Shown here one piece after another: positions 57,617-64,000 of a DNA stretch of 64,000 nt. Every line of letters starts with the position of its first letter. Positions within the stretch are counted from its first letter, which is position 1. The notes below the pieces were generated by a model, which saw only the letters and a list, made by a program, of their open reading frames with translations, was not told where the DNA came from and did not search any database. Position numbers and translations under genes: made by a program. Source of the DNA: Vitrella brassicaformis CCMP3155 (Eukaryota > Protista > Chromerida); contig CDMY01000434.1 in the NCBI GenBank assembly GCA_001179505.1, positions 13,243-77,242 on the forward strand. Reading direction: 5' to 3'.

Positions 57617-60600
57617 CTAGCTCGCCCCATCACCCCCAGCCCCCTCACTCCCCCCGGGCCCCTTCTGGCCACTCCCCTCTCCACGGCCCAGCAGCTGCAT
57701 TATCACATCCTCGGCCCGCCGCGGCAGTTCCTGAGCCATAGCGGCAGAAAGGGCCCGTCCCAAGGGCTGCTGCTGCAGCTGCTGCTGCTGCAGCTGCTGC
57801 TGCTGATGCTGCTGCTGTGGCACACTCAATCCACTCGGGCCTGTGTTGGTGTTGGTATTCGGCTGACCCCGGTGCAAAATGCCTCTCCCCAAGCCCCGTG
57901 AGAAATCGAAGTTCTCCGACACAGCTCGGTCCACAAAGGAGCCTGGCGCATGGTGGTCGACAACCATGGCTGTGGCTGCTGGGTCCTGCTGCTGGTGCTG
58001 GTATTGTGGCTGGGCCATGTCGAAGCCGCCTCCAGGAGTGTGTGGCTGCGGGAAGTGCGACAGCTGACGGCTGGCAGCAAAGGGGACAGGCATGCCGATG
58101 TTCCGTGGGCACGGCCGGTTCTGCCGCGTCATTGGCTGAGGGGTGTAGGAGTACTGCCTCTGAGCGTTGTCATCCCCACTCGGCCCGAAGCTGCCGTCGG
58201 GATGGCGCACCCATAGCCCATGGGGTGGGTGTGGGGGAGGGGGAGAGGGCGCCTGGACGACCATAGCAGCGTTGGAGTCGCTCTCCTGCCGCGGCAGCGC
58301 CACATGTGGTGGCTGTTGGTGCTGGTGCTGTTGTTGGTGTGGGAGGTACATTGGAGGGGCGAAGGGGGGCGGCTGCTGGCTGTCTGGCAGCTGCATCACG
58401 ATGGCGGGGCCGAACAGCTGACCGCCGCGGTGTGGATGCTGCTGCTGCTGCTGCTGGTGTTGGCGTTGGTTGTGGGGGCTGCCATCGAGCGATTCGGCGG
58501 CGGTGTGGGGGAGGGGGAGAGGGTGTATGTGGTGTTTGGGGGGCCTCTTGCTCTTCCGTCCTCTCTGCACATACGAGTGGGGGTACCCGTCGTTCTCGGG
58601 AAAGCTGCATGGGACCCTGTTGGAGCGACCGCGGAATGACACAGACAGACAGAGAGAGACCATTGATTGACACAGACCCACACCTGTTTGGCCTTCCACT
58701 ACCCATCTACCGACCCGTTGTTAGCCTGGCAGGCGGGGCAGGCCGGCTCGTATTTGGGCGGCTCTAACACGCTGGTGCGGGGCGTGAAGTAGGGGCACAT
58801 CGGCTTGTGCCCTGGTGGCGGCCCGGCCGTGGCCAAACCGCCAGACATCCACAACACAACAGAGATCAGATGTCACCTCACCCACCCATCCCACCGATTG
58901 TGTGGGAGCGTGTCTGGCGTGGCGTACATACATCTGTTGTCGTGTGCCATGGGTATCTTCCTGTTGACCCCGCAGTGCCAGCAAAACTCGTGACCGCACT
59001 GACATGTCACGTGGTCACACTCCTAACACACAGACACGCACACAGACACAGACACAGACACACACGAGGGCGGGGTGGTCGTGTCGTGGTGGCCGTCAGC
59101 AGCTCTGTGCGTGCGCTTGCGTGTGCGTGTGTGTGTGTGTGTGTGTCGCTTGCCTCTTCGCTTTTGAATCCCCCGCCGTAGGCGCACTTGAGTGGGCAGG
59201 GCTTCCATCCTTCCTCTAGCAACTGGACCGGGGCAAGGTACAGAAAGGCGCTGTTTGGGCGAGGGGATGGGTGCGTGTCTAGGTGCGTACCTGTCTAACT
59301 CTGGCCTGGTGCTCTCGGAGGTCCTTCTTGTGCACCTTGCTCAGACGCTGCTCGCACGTCTCACCTGAACCACACACACACCAAGACACACACCAAGACA
59401 CACACACGTGTGCCGTCCGTCCGTCCATCCATCCATCCATCCACTCTCGGTTTGCCCACCTCTATGCGGCCCGTGCTCGCACTGCCACCAGCCAGCCAGC
59501 CAGCCAGCCACAGATAATTATCACAGAGAATCAGACGGATGGATGGCTATCTCCCCCNNNNNNNNNNNNNNNNNNNNNNNNNNNNNNNNNNNNNNNNNNN
59601 NNNNNNNNNNNNNNNNNNNNNNNNNNNNNNNNNNNNNNNNNNNNNNNNNNNNNNNNNNNNNNNNNNNNNNNNNNNNNNNNNNNNNNNNNNNNNNNNNNNN
59701 NNNNNNNNNNNNNNNNNNNNNNNNNNNNNNNNNNNNNNNNNNNNNNNNNNNNNNNNNNNNNNNNNNNNNNNNNNNNNNNNNNNNNNNNNNNNNNNNNNNN
59801 NNNNNNNNNNNNNNNNNNNNNNNNNNNNNNNNNNNNNNNNNNNNNNNNNNNNNNNNNCCACCCATCCACCCACACGAAGCCCTTTTGTGCTGGCTGCTTG
59901 TGCTGGTGTTTGGTTACGTTGCGAGGGAGTGTAGGAGTTTCTGGAATGACTTGGGCTGCAGAAGGGACTGAAACATGGAGTAGTGCTGCTCCAGCTGGGC
60001 GCGCAGGTCGAACAGGCAGTCGGGCAGGGGACACGTCAGCTTGTCCACACGCCGGGACATGACCACCTCTGCAGTGCACCACACGTATCAGTCAACACAA
60101 ATCAACACACACATGTGTATGTGTGTGGGTGCTATGTATGTGTGTGTGTGTCAACTGACCCTCGAAGTGTCTCGCGATGCACGGCTTGCAGAAGCGGTGG
60201 CTCGAGGGGCACGGCAAGGTCACACTGCCGTCCACAGGATGCTCATACAAACTAAACCATCACATACACACACACAGACAGAGAGAGAGAGAGAGAGCAG
60301 AGGCGTCACCCCACAGAGAGGAGGGTTGCAGAGGTGACTGACCAGATGGCGCACTGGAATGTTGGCGTGTCCCGCTGATCGTCGTCCCGTTCGTTCTGCA
60401 GCTGCTGGATCAGCTCAAGGTTCGCAGCACTCTCCTGCTCCAACTCACTCTGACACACACACACCACACACACGGACACACACAAGCCACAGATGACACC
60501 CTTGCCCTGCTGCACGGCAGACACCAGCTGACCTTGAGGCTCTCTCTAAAGTCATGTGACACCGCTCGCTGCAGGTCTTCGGCGGTGAGGACGGAGTCGC

Positions 60601-63600
60601 ACGAGGCCACGGGGCAGGCCACATCGACCAGCACAGAGCCGTGGCGACGCACCTCCCCCCTCCTGCGCGGCACACACGCACACACACACAGACAGGAGAG
60701 AGAGAGAGAGGGGCAAAGAGCATATGAAGGGGCTGGAGGGGGGTGGATGGGAGAGGGAGGGGTGTGTGTGTGTGTGTGTGAGCACCAATATTCTCTGAGA
60801 CAGTCCAGGTGTATGTACACCCCACAATGCAGCCGCTGCAGCCGCAGTAGAGGCTGCCCGCCCTCCCCCTCCCCCTCTCTCTCGTCTCTCCCTCCCTCTC
60901 CCTCTCCCTCAACGTCTACCACCCCGTCTCTCAGACACACGCAGCACATCTGAGTCCGGCTGCTGCTGCTATTGTTTTGAGCAAAATCACCAACACCAGC
61001 CGCCATCGGTGTGGCCGCTTCACCCTCTCCCTGCCGCCGCTGCATCGGCACGTTCCCGCCATGCATCTCAAGCACCGGGGTCTCCTGCACATCTGGTGTG
61101 GCTGTGGCTGTGGCTGTCGGCTCCTCTCTCAACCCAACACCCACACCAACACGCACACCGGCAGCACCAGGGTCGTCATCAATGGCTACAGCCGCCGCCG
61201 GCAGGTCGGCCTGTTCCACAGGGGGGCTGAGGACGATCGTCCCGCAATGATCGTGGTCGTCACCCCCGCCTCCGCCCCCTCCCCTCCACACAACCGGTTC
61301 CAGCGACAGTGCACATGGGCTGGGTGATCCCTCGGTCCCTCGAGAAGCCGCGGTCACAGGGCTGTCCAGCGGCGGCAGGGAGGCCGGCACGGGCGAAGCC
61401 GCTGACACGAATCCCTCAGAGGCCTCGGCGTCGTCTGCTGCGGTGTCATTGCCGTCTATGGCTGCGAGCGAGACCTCGATGGCCGTGTCCACTGCGCAAT
61501 GGTCGTGGTTGTCCTCCTCCTGGCCCTCCCCAAAGTCGCCCCAGCCGTCATCCACGTCATTGGCCGTCATCAGGGCGGCCGCACCGTCAGAGATGCTTTT
61601 GCAGGGTATGGCTGGAGGGGGGTGCAGGGACCCCTCGGTGAGCGGCCGGTCTTGGGTGTCACGGTGGTGGGTGGGCTGGTTGCCATCATTGCCATCTCCC
61701 TCCCCCTCTCCATCCCTTCTGTCTGCGTGGCGGGATGACGACACGGGCGTGTGGTAGACTTCGACTTCGTCGCTCTCATTCGCCTCTCCCCCCTCTCCCT
61801 CCCCAGACCCGCCCGACACCTCTTGACACTCTGCCGTCTGGTGCTCGGATTGTGGTGCCATGGCCGCACCCCCAGTGCCGACCTCGTCATCAGGGATTTC
61901 CGCGCAGGTCTGGAGGTACTGGACCAGCTCGGAGCACACCCTCTGCCGCAGCGCCGCGCCCTGTGCGGCCAGGGCGGTAGGGGGGTGCGTGCGTGTTTGG
62001 GTGGTGGCGATGGTGGTGGGCGGGGTGGCGGCGTCATCGAATATGGAGGAGGGGATGGTGTCCAGCTCGGCGAGGCTGGCGCGGAGGGGGTCGATCATGC
62101 TCATCAACTGCATCCGTCCATCCATCCATCCATCCACATGCTCGTGGGTGGAGGGGTGGGTGGGTGCGGTGTTTGGCGTCACTCACTGACCTGTCCGAGC
62201 ACCACGTCGGCGTCGCATGGGTCGTTCTGCAGACGGCGCCGCTCTAATTGGTTCCGCAACAACTCCTCTAGACAGCTGAGCAGGCCCTGAAGACCCACAC
62301 ATGCGCCTGCACGCCGCGCCCTTCATGGTGAGTCACCGCTGACTCACCCCGGTAGACTCTACGATGCCCTGAGTGGTGAGAAGCAGCCGACTCCATCTAG
62401 CGGCCACCCGCTGTCTGAGGTTGCCGGAGGCCATTGTCTTGTCCCCGCCTCCTCCCCCGCCCCCCCGAGCCACCCATGGCACCAGCCCGCCCTCGCCACC
62501 ATCACTGCTCGCATTCTGGCTACTCGTGCTCACCTGCATCACGCACACACAGCGCCCACCCACCACACCCACCCACCCACACCCACACACACACACGTGC
62601 AACGCTCCTTCCCCCATCCACACCGCCTCCTTATCACTGCCCTCACTGACCGATAGCTGCATCTTGGGCCGAGCCTTCTCCCGCTCCCACCGCTCCGACC
62701 GCGGCATGACGACGAAAGCGTCCTCAGGCCGATCGGTAGTGTACAGGACGTCATAGTGGCCGGGCCGCAGAAGCACGTGCAGCATCATGCAGCATGGCTG
62801 GGGGGATGAAATGGCGTCTCGGGAGGATGATGCGGGTGAGCCCCTCGATGACTGTGAGGGAGAGTCGGCCTGGGGCGGCAGGGGGGCAAGGTCGACCTGC
62901 CCGCTATGTGTGTCGCTGCAGTCTACAATAGGGAGAGGAGGAGAAGCCGATGGCGAAGCCGACGGAAATGGTGACGGTGCAGCGTCCTCAGCGTCAGGCC
63001 AGCTGGCGGGGCTGTGCACGACTCCACCCACATCGCTGCCGCCCTGTGTGGTGCTGCCGCCGGTCGTGCTGCTCGCCTCGCCGCCCTTGGTGTGGTCGTG
63101 GTCGCTCTTAAGAGCCGACGACTGCTCGCGGTGGAGAGGGGGGTCGCCGCCGCTGCTGCTGGTGGTGGCGGCAAAGCTGCTGGGGCCGTACTCGATGATC
63201 TGCGGCTTGTCACCGTCTCTGCACGCACACATGGGAGCCGTGGGTGGGGCGAGGCCATTCATGAGCTTGGGTGCGCACCTGTGGACCATGACGATGCACA
63301 CGCGCACTTTAAGGACATAGGGGCAGGCAACAAGGGTGACGTCTGCAGCGTCCTCGCCCATACGCAGCACCGAGTCGCTGAATGGTTCACACGGGTGGCG
63401 ACACACACACACACAGGGGTGGGGCGCCTGTGTGGGTGGTTGCAGCCTCACTCCGCTCACTTGATAAAGTTGTTCATGTTTTGGTATGCGGTGGATTGCG
63501 CCCAGACGTCATAGGTGATGTGCCCGTTCTGCTCATGCGACCCATCGGGATTCACCTCCTCCTAACCAACACACACACACACACACACGCATCCTCTCCC

Positions 63601-64000
63601 TCTGTGTCTGTCTGTCTGTCTGTCTGTGTGTCACCTGAGCGTTTTGCTCAAGGAAGCGGCTGACAAGGTGCCTCAGCACGCGCACAAAAGCGGCGTCGTA
63701 TTCATCCGAGTTGAAGGTGGTCCACACCTCGTCGATCAGGCGGGCCACCTCGGGCGGCTCGGTGATGTCCGTCCTCGCCATACTGCATCACCTGCAGCGC
63801 ACACACACATAACACAGAGAAAGGTGTGGGTGGTTGGGCTGGTTTGTGGGGTTTGTGGGCTCGGTGCGGACGGACCGTGTCATGCAGCTCTTCAAGCATC
63901 TCTGGCCGTGCCCAGAGCGCCGCTTCGATGTAGCTGTACAAGACGGCACGATAGTAACAGTTCCCATCCCCACGCACCGATCGCCAACCTGACCACACCA
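57617..64000 (-). CDS. Otubain-type (peptidase C65) deubiquitinase domain + RING-like finger + RBR E3 ligase, apparently one multi-exon gene; 5' end lies beyond the window
   Basis: RSVRGDGNCYYRA (Cys box), LLRPGHYDVLY (His box); CCVCLRD...HCGVYIHLDC...CPVASC; RING1 CAICLYEHPVDGSVTLPCPSSHRFCKPC...CPLPDC; RING2 WKPCPLKC...ECDHVTCQCGHEFCWHC; Q/P-rich tail. The IBR probably lies in gap 59558-59857; one splice-phase inconsistency near 63790. Confidence 0.8.
59558..59857. other. Scaffold gap (300 N) where the IBR exon(s) would be expected
   Basis: N run between the RING1 and pre-RING2 exons. Confidence 0.99.

What the first reader, a model, noticed from the sequence alone, without database searches (positions are those of the whole stretch)
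57617..64000. Otubain deubiquitinase fused to an RBR E3 ligase: possible single-chain ubiquitin-editing enzyme
Seen: on the minus strand the OTU Cys box (GDGNC, ~63950) and His box (RPGHY, ~62760) are linked by GT-AG exons that I could follow in phase (62282-62190, 62083-60790, 60663-60533, 60448-60344, 60253-60160, 60069-59908) to a RING-like finger, RING1 and then RING2. I saw no stop or new start between them. The RING2 catalytic Cys context is intact (ECDHVTC). Established: otubains remove ubiquitin and bind E2~Ub; RBRs transfer ubiquitin via a RING2 thioester; A20 is the textbook DUB+E3 protein but uses zinc fingers, not an RBR. Inference: opposing writer and eraser activities on one polypeptide (chain editing or self-restraint). 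I know of no characterised OTU-RBR fusion.
Basis: partly seen in the sequence, partly recalled or inferred. Interest (0 to 1): 0.78.

Follow-up and report, generated by a model that had tools for sequence, protein, structure and literature searches.

The report
Otubain–RBR fusion gene in Vitrella
The alga Vitrella brassicaformis very probably makes one long protein that carries both a ubiquitin-removing enzyme (otubain) and a ubiquitin-attaching enzyme (RBR ligase); no studied protein has this pairing, and assembly faults split and truncate the gene in the public annotation.

Summary
On the minus strand of Vitrella brassicaformis contig CDMY01000434.1, whose end is window base 64000, there is an otubain Cys box and His box. 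Both pass Pfam Peptidase_C65.

Downstream lie a long disordered linker, a degenerate RING1-like finger, a complete RING1, the tail of an IBR, and a RING2 with its catalytic Cys (Pfam IBR above threshold).

My exon chain reproduces two public gene models exactly:
- P0001 (1000 aa) already joins the otubain His-box half to RING1.
- P0003 (451 aa) holds RING2 and the tail.

Spliced RNA-like contigs bridge the N gap with 133 letters. These keep the reading frame, so P0001 and P0003 are one gene.

The Cys-box exon is out of frame with exon 2 in the window. DNA contigs from two other runs carry 65 more bases at 63769, which restores the frame.

The weak point is the pair of joints that make the fusion (E6-E7-E8, 62348 to 62107). 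No RNA contig covered them. They rest on consensus GT-AG sites, a preserved frame, codon bias and the public model.

I put a single polypeptide at about 0.8. Any ubiquitin-editing activity is inference only. I found no relatives and no paper describing this architecture. First readers of this scan noted otubain plus RING-like fingers on other pieces of the same genome; I could not check those notes.

The parts
63876..63998 (-). Exon 1 (partial). It holds the otubain Cys box GDGNC, with the Cys codon at 63957-63959. The 5' end of the gene lies beyond the contig end.
   Evidence: Pfam Peptidase_C65 scores 35.8 bits, E 7.7e-9, over profile positions 40-72. The contig ends at window base 64000.
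63635..63791 (-). Exon 2 (otubain helices). In the window it is out of frame with exon 1. The reference lacks 65 nt at 63769.
   Evidence: Frame test. DNA contigs X3 record 17 and X5 record 23 are a net 65 nt longer at 63769. 65 mod 3 = 2, which is the shift needed.
63461..63561 (-). Exon 3 (otubain).
   Evidence: Part of the chain that reproduces P0001.
63279..63377 (-). Exon 4 (otubain).
   Evidence: Part of the chain that reproduces P0001.
62651..63218 (-). Exon 5. It holds a low-complexity insert of about 130 aa inside the OTU fold, then the His box RPGHYD (62750-62767).
   Evidence: Pfam C65 profile positions 220-242. Alignment to C. elegans otubain 4dhi. RNA contigs X1 record 5 and X2 records 10 and 11.
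62348..62533 (-). Exon 6, the start of the linker.
   Evidence: The E5-E6 joint 62531->62649 is seen in RNA contig X1. Codon score is positive only in the model frame.
62191..62286 (-). Exon 7, 32 codons (GLLSCLEELLRNQLERRRLQNDPCDADVVLGQ). This is the bridge on which the fusion depends.
   Evidence: Flanked by the sites GTGAGT...CAG and GTCAGTGA...GATGCAG. Codon score is +0.40 per codon in frame and about -0.43 in the other two frames. Shuffle p = 0.0016. No direct RNA joint was seen.
60786..62107 (-). Exon 8: a 440-codon acidic and Gly-rich linker. It ends in the first half of a degenerate RING1-like finger (CCVC...HCGVYIHLDC).
   Evidence: RNA contigs cover 61014-61599. The sequence is unique in 1.8 billion representative proteins apart from P0001.
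60533..60662 (-). Exon 9: the second half of the RING1-like finger (CPVASC) and a helix.
   Evidence: X1 record 2 joins E8-E9-E10-E11.
60343..60449 (-). Exon 10: a helix and the start of RING1 (FQCAIC).
   Evidence: X1 record 2. Chain reproduces P0001.
60160..60251 (-). Exon 11: the RING1 core (LPCPSSHRFCKPC).
   Evidence: Pfam zf-C3HC4 scores 19.4 bits, below the cutoff of 21. The joint 60068->60160 is seen in X1 and X2.
59918..60068 (-). Exon 12: the last RING1 ligand pair (CPLPDC) and a helix. The public model P0001 ends here by reading TAA through the donor site.
   Evidence: X1 record 1 continues past this point.
59558..59857 (.). Assembly gap. It must hold the exon or exons for about 38 codons of the IBR.
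   Evidence: X1 record 1 has 133 letters between 59366 and 59916, and the frame is kept.
59460..59481 (-). Small exon at the end of the IBR (CEHGPHR-G).
   Evidence: Flanked by cag| and |gtgggc. Together with the next exon it gives C-x4-H-x4-C. It lies in a stretch that read laying masked as repeat.
59291..59364 (-). Exon for the last IBR ligand and the IBR-RING2 helix (ETCEQRLSKVHKKDLREHQARVRQ).
   Evidence: Joint 59222->59291 in X1 and X2. Reproduces P0003.
59154..59222 (-). Exon for the start of RING2 (WKPCPLKC...). It is followed by a GC-AG intron at 59023-59153.
58932..59022 (-). Exon for the RING2 catalytic core (ECDHVTCQCGHEFCWHC). The catalytic Cys codon is 59017-59019.
   Evidence: Pfam IBR scores 25.2 bits against a cutoff of 24.3. 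Atlas feature score 0.94 to IBR/Rcat clusters.
58715..58811 (-). Cys-rich exon after RING2 (WHKPMCPYF...CPACQANNG).
   Evidence: Joints 58810->58931 and 58615->58714 in X1 and X2.
57617..58616 (-). Last exon: a Q/P/H-rich disordered tail of about 330 aa, with the stop at 57617-57619.
   Evidence: Identical to the tail of P0003. X1 record 1.

Best explanation
This is one nuclear gene of Vitrella brassicaformis, on the minus strand from beyond 64000 down to 57617. It has at least 19 exons, and at least 1554 codons are visible or counted.

The encoded protein runs in this order:
- an N-terminal otubain-type OTU deubiquitinase with Cys, His and Asp in place;
- about 560 aa of disordered acidic linker;
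- a degenerate RING1-like finger;
- a RING1-IBR-RING2 (RBR) ligase module with the RING2 catalytic Cys;
- a Q/P-rich tail.

The public annotation hides this architecture for three reasons:
- The contig ends inside the gene.
- The reference lacks 65 nt in exon 2. This breaks the frame after the Cys box, so the model P0001 starts at a later Met.
- A 300-N gap swallows most of the IBR, so the model is cut into P0001 and P0003.

Likely mechanism (inferred, not shown): the RBR takes ubiquitin from an E2 onto its RING2 Cys and passes it on. The tethered otubain trims chains in cis. That would either protect the ligase from its own autoubiquitination or restrict the chain type it leaves on substrates. 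This would be a covalent version of the HOIP-OTULIN pairing.

Shown here: the domain identities, the motifs, most of the splice joints and continuity across the gap. Inferred: the E6-E7-E8 joints, and both enzyme activities.
For: - Pfam C65 hits on exon 1 and on P0001:1-330 are above the cutoff.
- The Atlas's own model of P0001 has TM 0.71 to an otubain cluster.
- IBR/Rcat: Pfam 25.2 bits against 24.3, and Atlas 0.94.
- All eight RING1 ligands are present, in the pattern C-x2-C-x13-C-x3-H-x2-C-x2-C-x18-C-x4-C.
- The exon chain equals P0001 and P0003 exactly.
- P0001 itself runs from the otubain His box to RING1. It was built by Augustus with RNA-seq intron hints (PMC4501334).
- RNA-like spliced contigs give the joints E5-E6, E8-E9-E10-E11, and E11 to the 3' end across the gap, in frame.
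- The intron 7 donor GTCAGTGA is identical to that of the RNA-proven intron 5, and the acceptor (GGATGCAG against TGATGCAG) differs by one letter.
- Exon 7 has a coding-type codon score only in the bridging frame. It has no in-frame ATG of its own, so it can only be coding if joined to exon 6.
- Runs X6 and X7 hold 0.37 of the words of 62108-62347. An exon-only RNA would hold 0.31. The same runs hold 0.62-0.64 of 59858-64000, against 0.67 expected.
- All counted pieces sum to 4662 nt, which is 1554 codons exactly.
Against: - No RNA contig covers 61600-62531, so the joints 62348|62286 and 62191|62107 were not seen.
- RNA contig depth is about 22 over the RBR end but about 5 over exon 8 and the otubain part. 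That could mean two transcripts, although contig depth is a poor measure.
- If intron 6 is not spliced, the otubain frame stops at 62333, four codons after the donor. ATGs at 62113, 62104 and 62098 could then start a separate RBR protein.
- Vitrella genes lie a median 92 bp apart, and Augustus can merge close neighbours.
- In the window as assembled, the Cys box is out of frame with the rest of the OTU domain.
- The kind of runs X6 and X7 is not on record, and DNA runs X11 and X12 also show partial shares.
- No relative with this architecture was found.
Confidence: 0.78

Rival explanations
1. These are two adjacent same-strand genes that the gene predictor merged. In this reading the otubain gene ends at TGA 62333-62335 (...STGVSQR*) with intron 6 unspliced. 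A separate RBR ligase gene starts at an ATG at 62113, 62104 or 62098. Exon 7 would be UTR or intergenic DNA.
For: RNA contigs are absent between 61600 and 62531. A stop lies four codons past the intron 6 donor, and three ATGs sit at the start of exon 8. Median gene spacing in Vitrella is 92 bp. RNA contig depth is uneven, about 22 against about 5.
Against: Exon 7 has a strong coding codon score in exactly the bridging frame: +0.40 per codon, with shuffle p = 0.0016. Both introns have consensus sites that match RNA-proven introns of the same gene. The frame is kept through both joints. The word shares of X6 and X7 fit an exon-only middle piece. Only 219 nt would have to hold a 3'UTR, a promoter and a 5'UTR.
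Confidence: 0.15
2. It is one gene, but the otubain part is a dead remnant. In this reading the 65-nt loss at 63769 is real in the strain. Translation then starts at Met 63781, as in P0001. The product would be an RBR ligase carrying a Cys-less otubain fold that could at most bind ubiquitin or an E2.
For: The window sequence is out of frame between the Cys-box exon and exon 2. P0001 begins after the Cys box. The same scan noted Cys-to-Ser otubain folds elsewhere in this genome (unchecked).
Against: DNA contigs of two other runs from two studies (X3 and X5) carry the extra 65 nt. That number restores the frame. It also restores the Cys-to-helix spacing to about 67 aa, close to the roughly 66 aa I recall for human OTUB1. 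The Cys box, His box and Asp are all intact.
Confidence: 0.07

Closest known systems
Otubains (OTUB1/OTUB2, MEROPS/Pfam Peptidase_C65)
   Same: It shares the DGNC Cys box, the PGHYD His/Asp box and the central helices, and it passes the Pfam family threshold. The best PDB hit is C. elegans otubain (4dhi), aligned over the His box.
   Different: Known otubains are small proteins of about 230-290 aa that stand alone. This one has an insert of about 130 aa inside the fold and at least 1200 aa of extra protein, including a ligase. The N-terminal E2- and ubiquitin-binding arm cannot be assessed because it lies off the contig.
RBR E3 ligases (Ariadne/HHARI, RNF14, RNF144, RNF216, HOIP, parkin)
   Same: It has RING1 with a C-x4-C last ligand pair, an IBR tail of C-x4-H-x4-C, a helix, then RING2 with the catalytic Cys in a GC-x-H-x-T-C-like context followed by CGHEFCW-x-C. 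The nearest Atlas clusters are IBR and RNF216-type Rcat.
   Different: It is very divergent, and single-sequence search gives no significant PDB hit. RING2 opens with C-x3-C rather than C-x2-C. An extra degenerate RING1-like finger lies upstream. None of the usual accessory domains (UBL, RWD, Ariadne, PUB) was found. An otubain sits at the N-terminus instead.
HOIP (RBR) with OTULIN (an OTU deubiquitinase) in LUBAC
   Same: An RBR ligase is paired physically with an OTU-fold deubiquitinase. In LUBAC the deubiquitinase limits the ligase's autoubiquitination (from my own knowledge of the literature, not tested here). OTULIN-family (Peptidase_C101) clusters appear among the Atlas neighbours of the OTU part.
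   Different: In LUBAC the two are separate proteins joined through a PUB-PIM contact. Here they would be one chain. Homology to HOIP or OTULIN specifically is not shown.
A20/TNFAIP3
   Same: It is a single polypeptide with an OTU deubiquitinase and an E3 activity, the textbook 'ubiquitin-editing' enzyme.
   Different: A20 has an A20-type OTU domain and uses zinc finger 4 as its ligase element. It has no otubain domain, no RBR and no thioester Cys.
Long otubain proteins (Chlamydomonas OTU2p; Atlas clusters of 639-1013 aa; the otubain + B-box cluster of 750 aa)
   Same: These show that otubain domains do occur inside long multidomain proteins of algae and uncultured eukaryotes (PMC8894339).
   Different: OTU2p carries UBA and UIM elements with a C-terminal otubain. 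The Atlas cluster carries B-boxes. None lists IBR, and kinship to this gene is not shown.

Membership tests
Otubain (Peptidase_C65) | Match to the family profile above the curated threshold | tested here: met
   PF10275 scores 35.8 bits on exon 1 alone and 26.6 bits on P0001:1-330, against a cutoff of 24.3.
Otubain (Peptidase_C65) | Catalytic Cys in a D-G-N-C box, with His and Asp in a P-G-H-Y-D box | tested here: met
   GDGNC (Cys codon 63957-63959) and RPGHYD (62750-62767) were read directly.
Otubain (Peptidase_C65) | One uninterrupted reading frame through the whole domain | tested here: inconclusive
   Exons 1 and 2 are out of frame in the window. Contigs X3 and X5 carry +65 nt at 63769, which would restore the frame, but I could not read those letters. 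The N-terminal 40 or so profile positions lie off the contig.
Otubain (Peptidase_C65) | Isopeptidase activity on ubiquitin chains | not testable with these tools
   This needs a Ub-PA or di-ubiquitin assay.
RBR E3 ligase | RING1 with eight Zn ligands (C3HC4) | tested here: met
   The pattern C-x2-C-x13-C-x3-H-x2-C-x2-C-x18-C-x4-C is in exons 10-12. The Pfam RING profiles stay below their cutoffs (19.4 against 21).
RBR E3 ligase | IBR (C6HC) between the two RINGs | tested here: inconclusive
   Only the last C-x4-H-x4-C is readable (59481-59460 plus 59364 onward). About 38 codons lie in the N gap. They are present in RNA contig X1 record 1 as part of the 133 unread letters, which is long enough for the rest of a short IBR.
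RBR E3 ligase | RING2 (Rcat) with a catalytic Cys | tested here: met
   PF01485 scores 25.2 bits against a cutoff of 24.3 on P0003:1-140. Atlas score is 0.94 with 185 shared features to IBR/Rcat clusters. In ECDHVTC the first Cys sits at the catalytic position.
RBR E3 ligase | RING1, IBR and RING2 on one transcript, in that order | tested here: met
   X1 record 1 (1609 nt) runs from exon 11 through the gap to the last exon, in frame.
RBR E3 ligase | E2-dependent thioester formation and ligase activity | not testable with these tools
   This needs an in vitro ubiquitination assay.
A20-type ubiquitin-editing enzyme | A20-type OTU domain plus A20 zinc fingers | tested here: not met
   The OTU domain is of the otubain type, and no zf-A20 hit was found. 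The ligase part is an RBR. The likeness is functional only.

The most novel reading that the evidence does not exclude
This is a natural single-chain writer-eraser of ubiquitin. In this reading the otubain is not only a cis-acting trimmer. Like OTUB1, it would also dock charged E2~Ub, and so feed or gate the RBR module on the same chain. The gene would be one member of a Vitrella-specific family of otubain-ligase fusions, as hinted by other notes of this scan on the same genome.
Probability: 0.2. Interest if true: 0.7.

Novelty: new variant of a known kind. Interest (0 to 1): 0.45.

Why it matters
Deubiquitinases and E3 ligases often work as non-covalent pairs, for example HOIP with OTULIN and OTUB1 with E2s. 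A natural fusion of an otubain to a thioester-forming RBR would argue, by the gene-fusion ('Rosetta stone') principle, for a direct functional link between these two families. It would also give a compact system for asking whether a tethered eraser protects a ligase from itself or edits its products.

On the practical side, a clear domain architecture is invisible in the public record. P0001 and P0003 have no precomputed Pfam domain on record in the protein collection, and the source names both generically (RING-type domain-containing protein). The causes are a contig end, a missing 65 nt and an N gap. The gene model should be repaired.

The find is limited to one species so far and has no biochemical support. 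It is moderately interesting, not striking.

Tried and rejected
- **Word-index search with exon 8.** Nothing in the 242-770 aa range.
- **Word-index search with P0001.** It found only itself in the 550-1750 aa range. Low-complexity words may have filled the candidate list, so this is weak evidence of absence.
- **Word-index search with the last exon.** It found only P0003. No ORF from an RNA contig is on record, so I could not read the IBR letters in the gap.
- **HMMER search of 1.8 billion representatives with exon 8.** It found only P0001 and an unrelated repeat protein, P0002.
- **AlphaFold of P0003:10-130 and P0001:790-1000 without an alignment.** Mean pLDDT was 39 and 37, which is unusable, so I ran no fold search.
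- **phmmer of the RING2 part against the PDB.** No meaningful hit. The RING1 part gave only weak generic RING hits, with RNF144A and RNF216 at E of about 0.06-0.08.
- **Two metagenome scans.** No relative was found. The single locus L002 is a bacterial flavoprotein contig that shares EEGWKPCP by chance.
- **Test for internal duplication between the RING1-like finger and RING1.** The motif matches are collinear but not significant (E = 0.057).
- **Tight spacing as an argument against two genes.** I withdrew most of this after reading that Vitrella genes lie a median 92 bp apart.
- **Literature searches for an otubain-RBR fusion.** None was found. The one joint hit for Peptidase_C65 and IBR was the author name Ibrahim.
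Full report
**Where this is.** The window is the last 64 kb of Vitrella brassicaformis CCMP3155 contig CDMY01000434.1 (77,242 bp). Window base 64000 is the end of the contig.

**The observation.** The minus strand carries the otubain Cys box GDGNC, with its Cys codon at 63957-63959, and the His box RPGHYD at 62750-62767.
- Pfam Peptidase_C65 hits exon 1 alone at 35.8 bits and P0001:1-330 at 26.6 bits, against a cutoff of 24.3.
- The ESM Atlas's own model of the public protein matches an otubain cluster at TM 0.71.
- Downstream I find a complete RING1 ligand set.
- RING2 passes the Pfam IBR cutoff at 25.2 against 24.3 bits.
- RING2 also scores 0.94 against IBR/Rcat clusters.

The RING2 sequence ECDHVTCQCGHEFCWHC has a Cys at the catalytic position.

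**The gene model.** I chained GT-AG exons by hand. A full HMMER search with exon 8 then returned the public model P0001 (1000 aa), and a word search with the last exon returned P0003 (451 aa). My chain reproduces both exactly.

P0001 starts at Met 63781, after the Cys box. It runs through the His box, the linker, a RING1-like finger and RING1. It ends at a TAA read through the donor site of exon 12, just before the N gap. P0003 starts at an artificial Met inside an intron and holds the IBR end, RING2 and a Q/P-rich tail. The public annotation therefore already joins half an otubain to a RING finger. No Pfam domain is recorded for either protein in the collection's precomputed hits, and the source names both generically.

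**The gap (tested first, as asked).** Runs X1 and X2 give spliced, RNA-like contigs. X1 record 1 (1609 nt) runs from exon 11 through exon 12, then through 133 letters that lie on neither side of the gap. It continues into 59366 and on through RING2 to the last exon.

Exon 12 ends with two bases of a codon. Two letters on each side of the joint are ambiguous. (2+2+133+2) mod 3 = 1, which is exactly the phase that the next exon (G|GT GAG ACG...) needs. The small exon 59481-59460 (CEHGPHR-G) plus ETC gives C-x4-H-x4-C, the end of an IBR. The remaining 38 or so codons are enough for the rest of a short IBR. I could not read those letters, because no ORF of that contig is on record. P0001 and P0003 are therefore one gene, and the RBR order is proven at RNA level.

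**The Cys-box frame problem.** In the window, exon 1 ends in phase 0, but exon 2 from the acceptor at 63791 is in the wrong frame. Two DNA contigs from different studies are a net 65 nt longer than the window at 63769 (X3 record 17 and X5 record 23).

A shift of 2 mod 3 is what the frame needs, and 65 provides it. It also lengthens the Cys-to-helix spacing from about 45 aa to about 67 aa. As I recall, human OTUB1 has about 66. I conclude that the reference probably lacks 65 nt here. A real deletion in the strain, which would leave a Cys-less otubain, stays as a minor rival.

**The fusion itself.**
- *Direct RNA joints seen:* E5-E6 (62531->62649), E8-E9-E10-E11 (X1 record 2), and E11 to the 3' end (X1 record 1). 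Exon 8 is covered at 61014-61599.
- *Not seen:* E6-E7 and E7-E8. No RNA contig lies between 61600 and 62531.
- *Splice sites:* the intron 6 donor is GTGAGT. The intron 7 donor GTCAGTGA is identical to that of the proven intron 5, and its acceptor differs by one letter.
- *Frame:* both joints keep the reading frame.
- *Codon bias:* exon 7 has a codon log-odds of +0.40 per codon in the bridging frame and about -0.43 in the other two frames. Only 0.16% of shuffles reach that score, and so do only 5% of all 96-nt windows of the remaining 57 kb, real coding frames included.
- *No own start:* exon 7 has no in-frame ATG, so it can be coding only if joined to exon 6.
- *Word shares:* runs X6 and X7, each with about 50 Mb of contigs, hold 0.37 of the words of 62108-62347, where an exon-only RNA would hold 0.31. 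They hold 0.62-0.64 of 59858-64000, where 0.67 is expected. Their kind is not on record, so this is only suggestive.
- *Against:* a stop lies four codons past the intron 6 donor, and three ATGs open exon 8. Vitrella genes are a median 92 bp apart, and the models come from Augustus with RNA-seq intron hints (PMC4501334). A merged pair of genes is therefore possible.

I put one polypeptide at about 0.8.

**What it probably does.** The visible and counted pieces sum to 4662 nt, which is 1554 codons, plus the missing N-terminus. The layout is otubain, then a disordered linker of about 560 aa, a RING1-like finger, RING1-IBR-RING2, and a disordered tail.

From established knowledge, not tested here: RBRs take ubiquitin from an E2 onto the RING2 Cys. 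Ligases commonly ubiquitinate themselves. OTU enzymes bound to RBRs limit this, as OTULIN does on HOIP. OTUB1 also binds charged E2s.

The most economical mechanism is a ligase with a tethered chain trimmer that acts in cis on the ligase or on its products. Nothing here tests activity.

**Comparison and novelty.** It is a member of Peptidase_C65 by profile and motifs. It is an RBR by RING1, RING2 and their order, with the IBR only partly seen. It is not an A20-type enzyme.

I found no relative with this layout and no paper describing one. Long otubain proteins do exist, including an otubain + B-box cluster and Chlamydomonas OTU2p (PMC8894339).

First readers of this scan noted otubain plus RING-like fingers on other pieces of the same genome: s1-231212, s1-233353 and s1-221890. 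I could not fetch those loci, so they remain leads. If they hold up, this gene is one of a lineage-specific family.

**Verdict.** This is a new variant of known kinds. The domain content is solid, the fusion is probable, the function is inferred, and interest is moderate.

Noticed in passing
window 63769: The reference is a net 65 nt shorter than the Logan DNA contigs of two runs from two studies (X3 record 17 and X5 record 23). The site lies inside exon 2 of the otubain, and the missing bases would restore the reading frame.
   Followed up: partly
window 59023-59153 (minus strand): This is a GC-AG intron (gag|GCAAGC...TTAG|gag) between the two RING2 exons. All the other introns of the gene are GT-AG. 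Most are 60-131 nt long and rich in (TG)n/(CA)n and GGAT repeats.
   Followed up: partly
window 62108-62347: Three marine sediment metagenome runs of 2025 (X13-X15) each hold about half of the sampled 31-letter words of this stretch. Near-identical Vitrella DNA therefore seems to occur in marine sediments.
   Followed up: no
window 59380-59445 (minus strand): The annotated start of P0003 (MDGRTDGTR) is translated from GGAT-repeat intron sequence. It is an artefact of the gap and not a real N-terminus.
   Followed up: yes
window 62790-63190 (minus strand): A Ser/Gly/Pro/Ala-rich insert of about 130 aa sits inside the otubain fold, between the IIEYGP strand and the His-box strand. It is in frame, and RNA contigs cover it.
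   Followed up: partly
other pieces of the same genome (notes s1-231212, s1-233353, s1-221890, s1-227121, s1-239598, s1-215899): First readers list several further otubain loci in Vitrella. Some have tandem RING-like fingers, some have Cys-to-Ser changes, and one lies on a retrotransposon. Together they may be an expanded otubain family.
   Followed up: no
L002 4119-4160: Metagenome contig OGCX01001548.1 matched only through the peptide EEGWKPCP inside a bacterial flavoprotein-like ORF. This is a chance hit and not a relative.
   Followed up: yes
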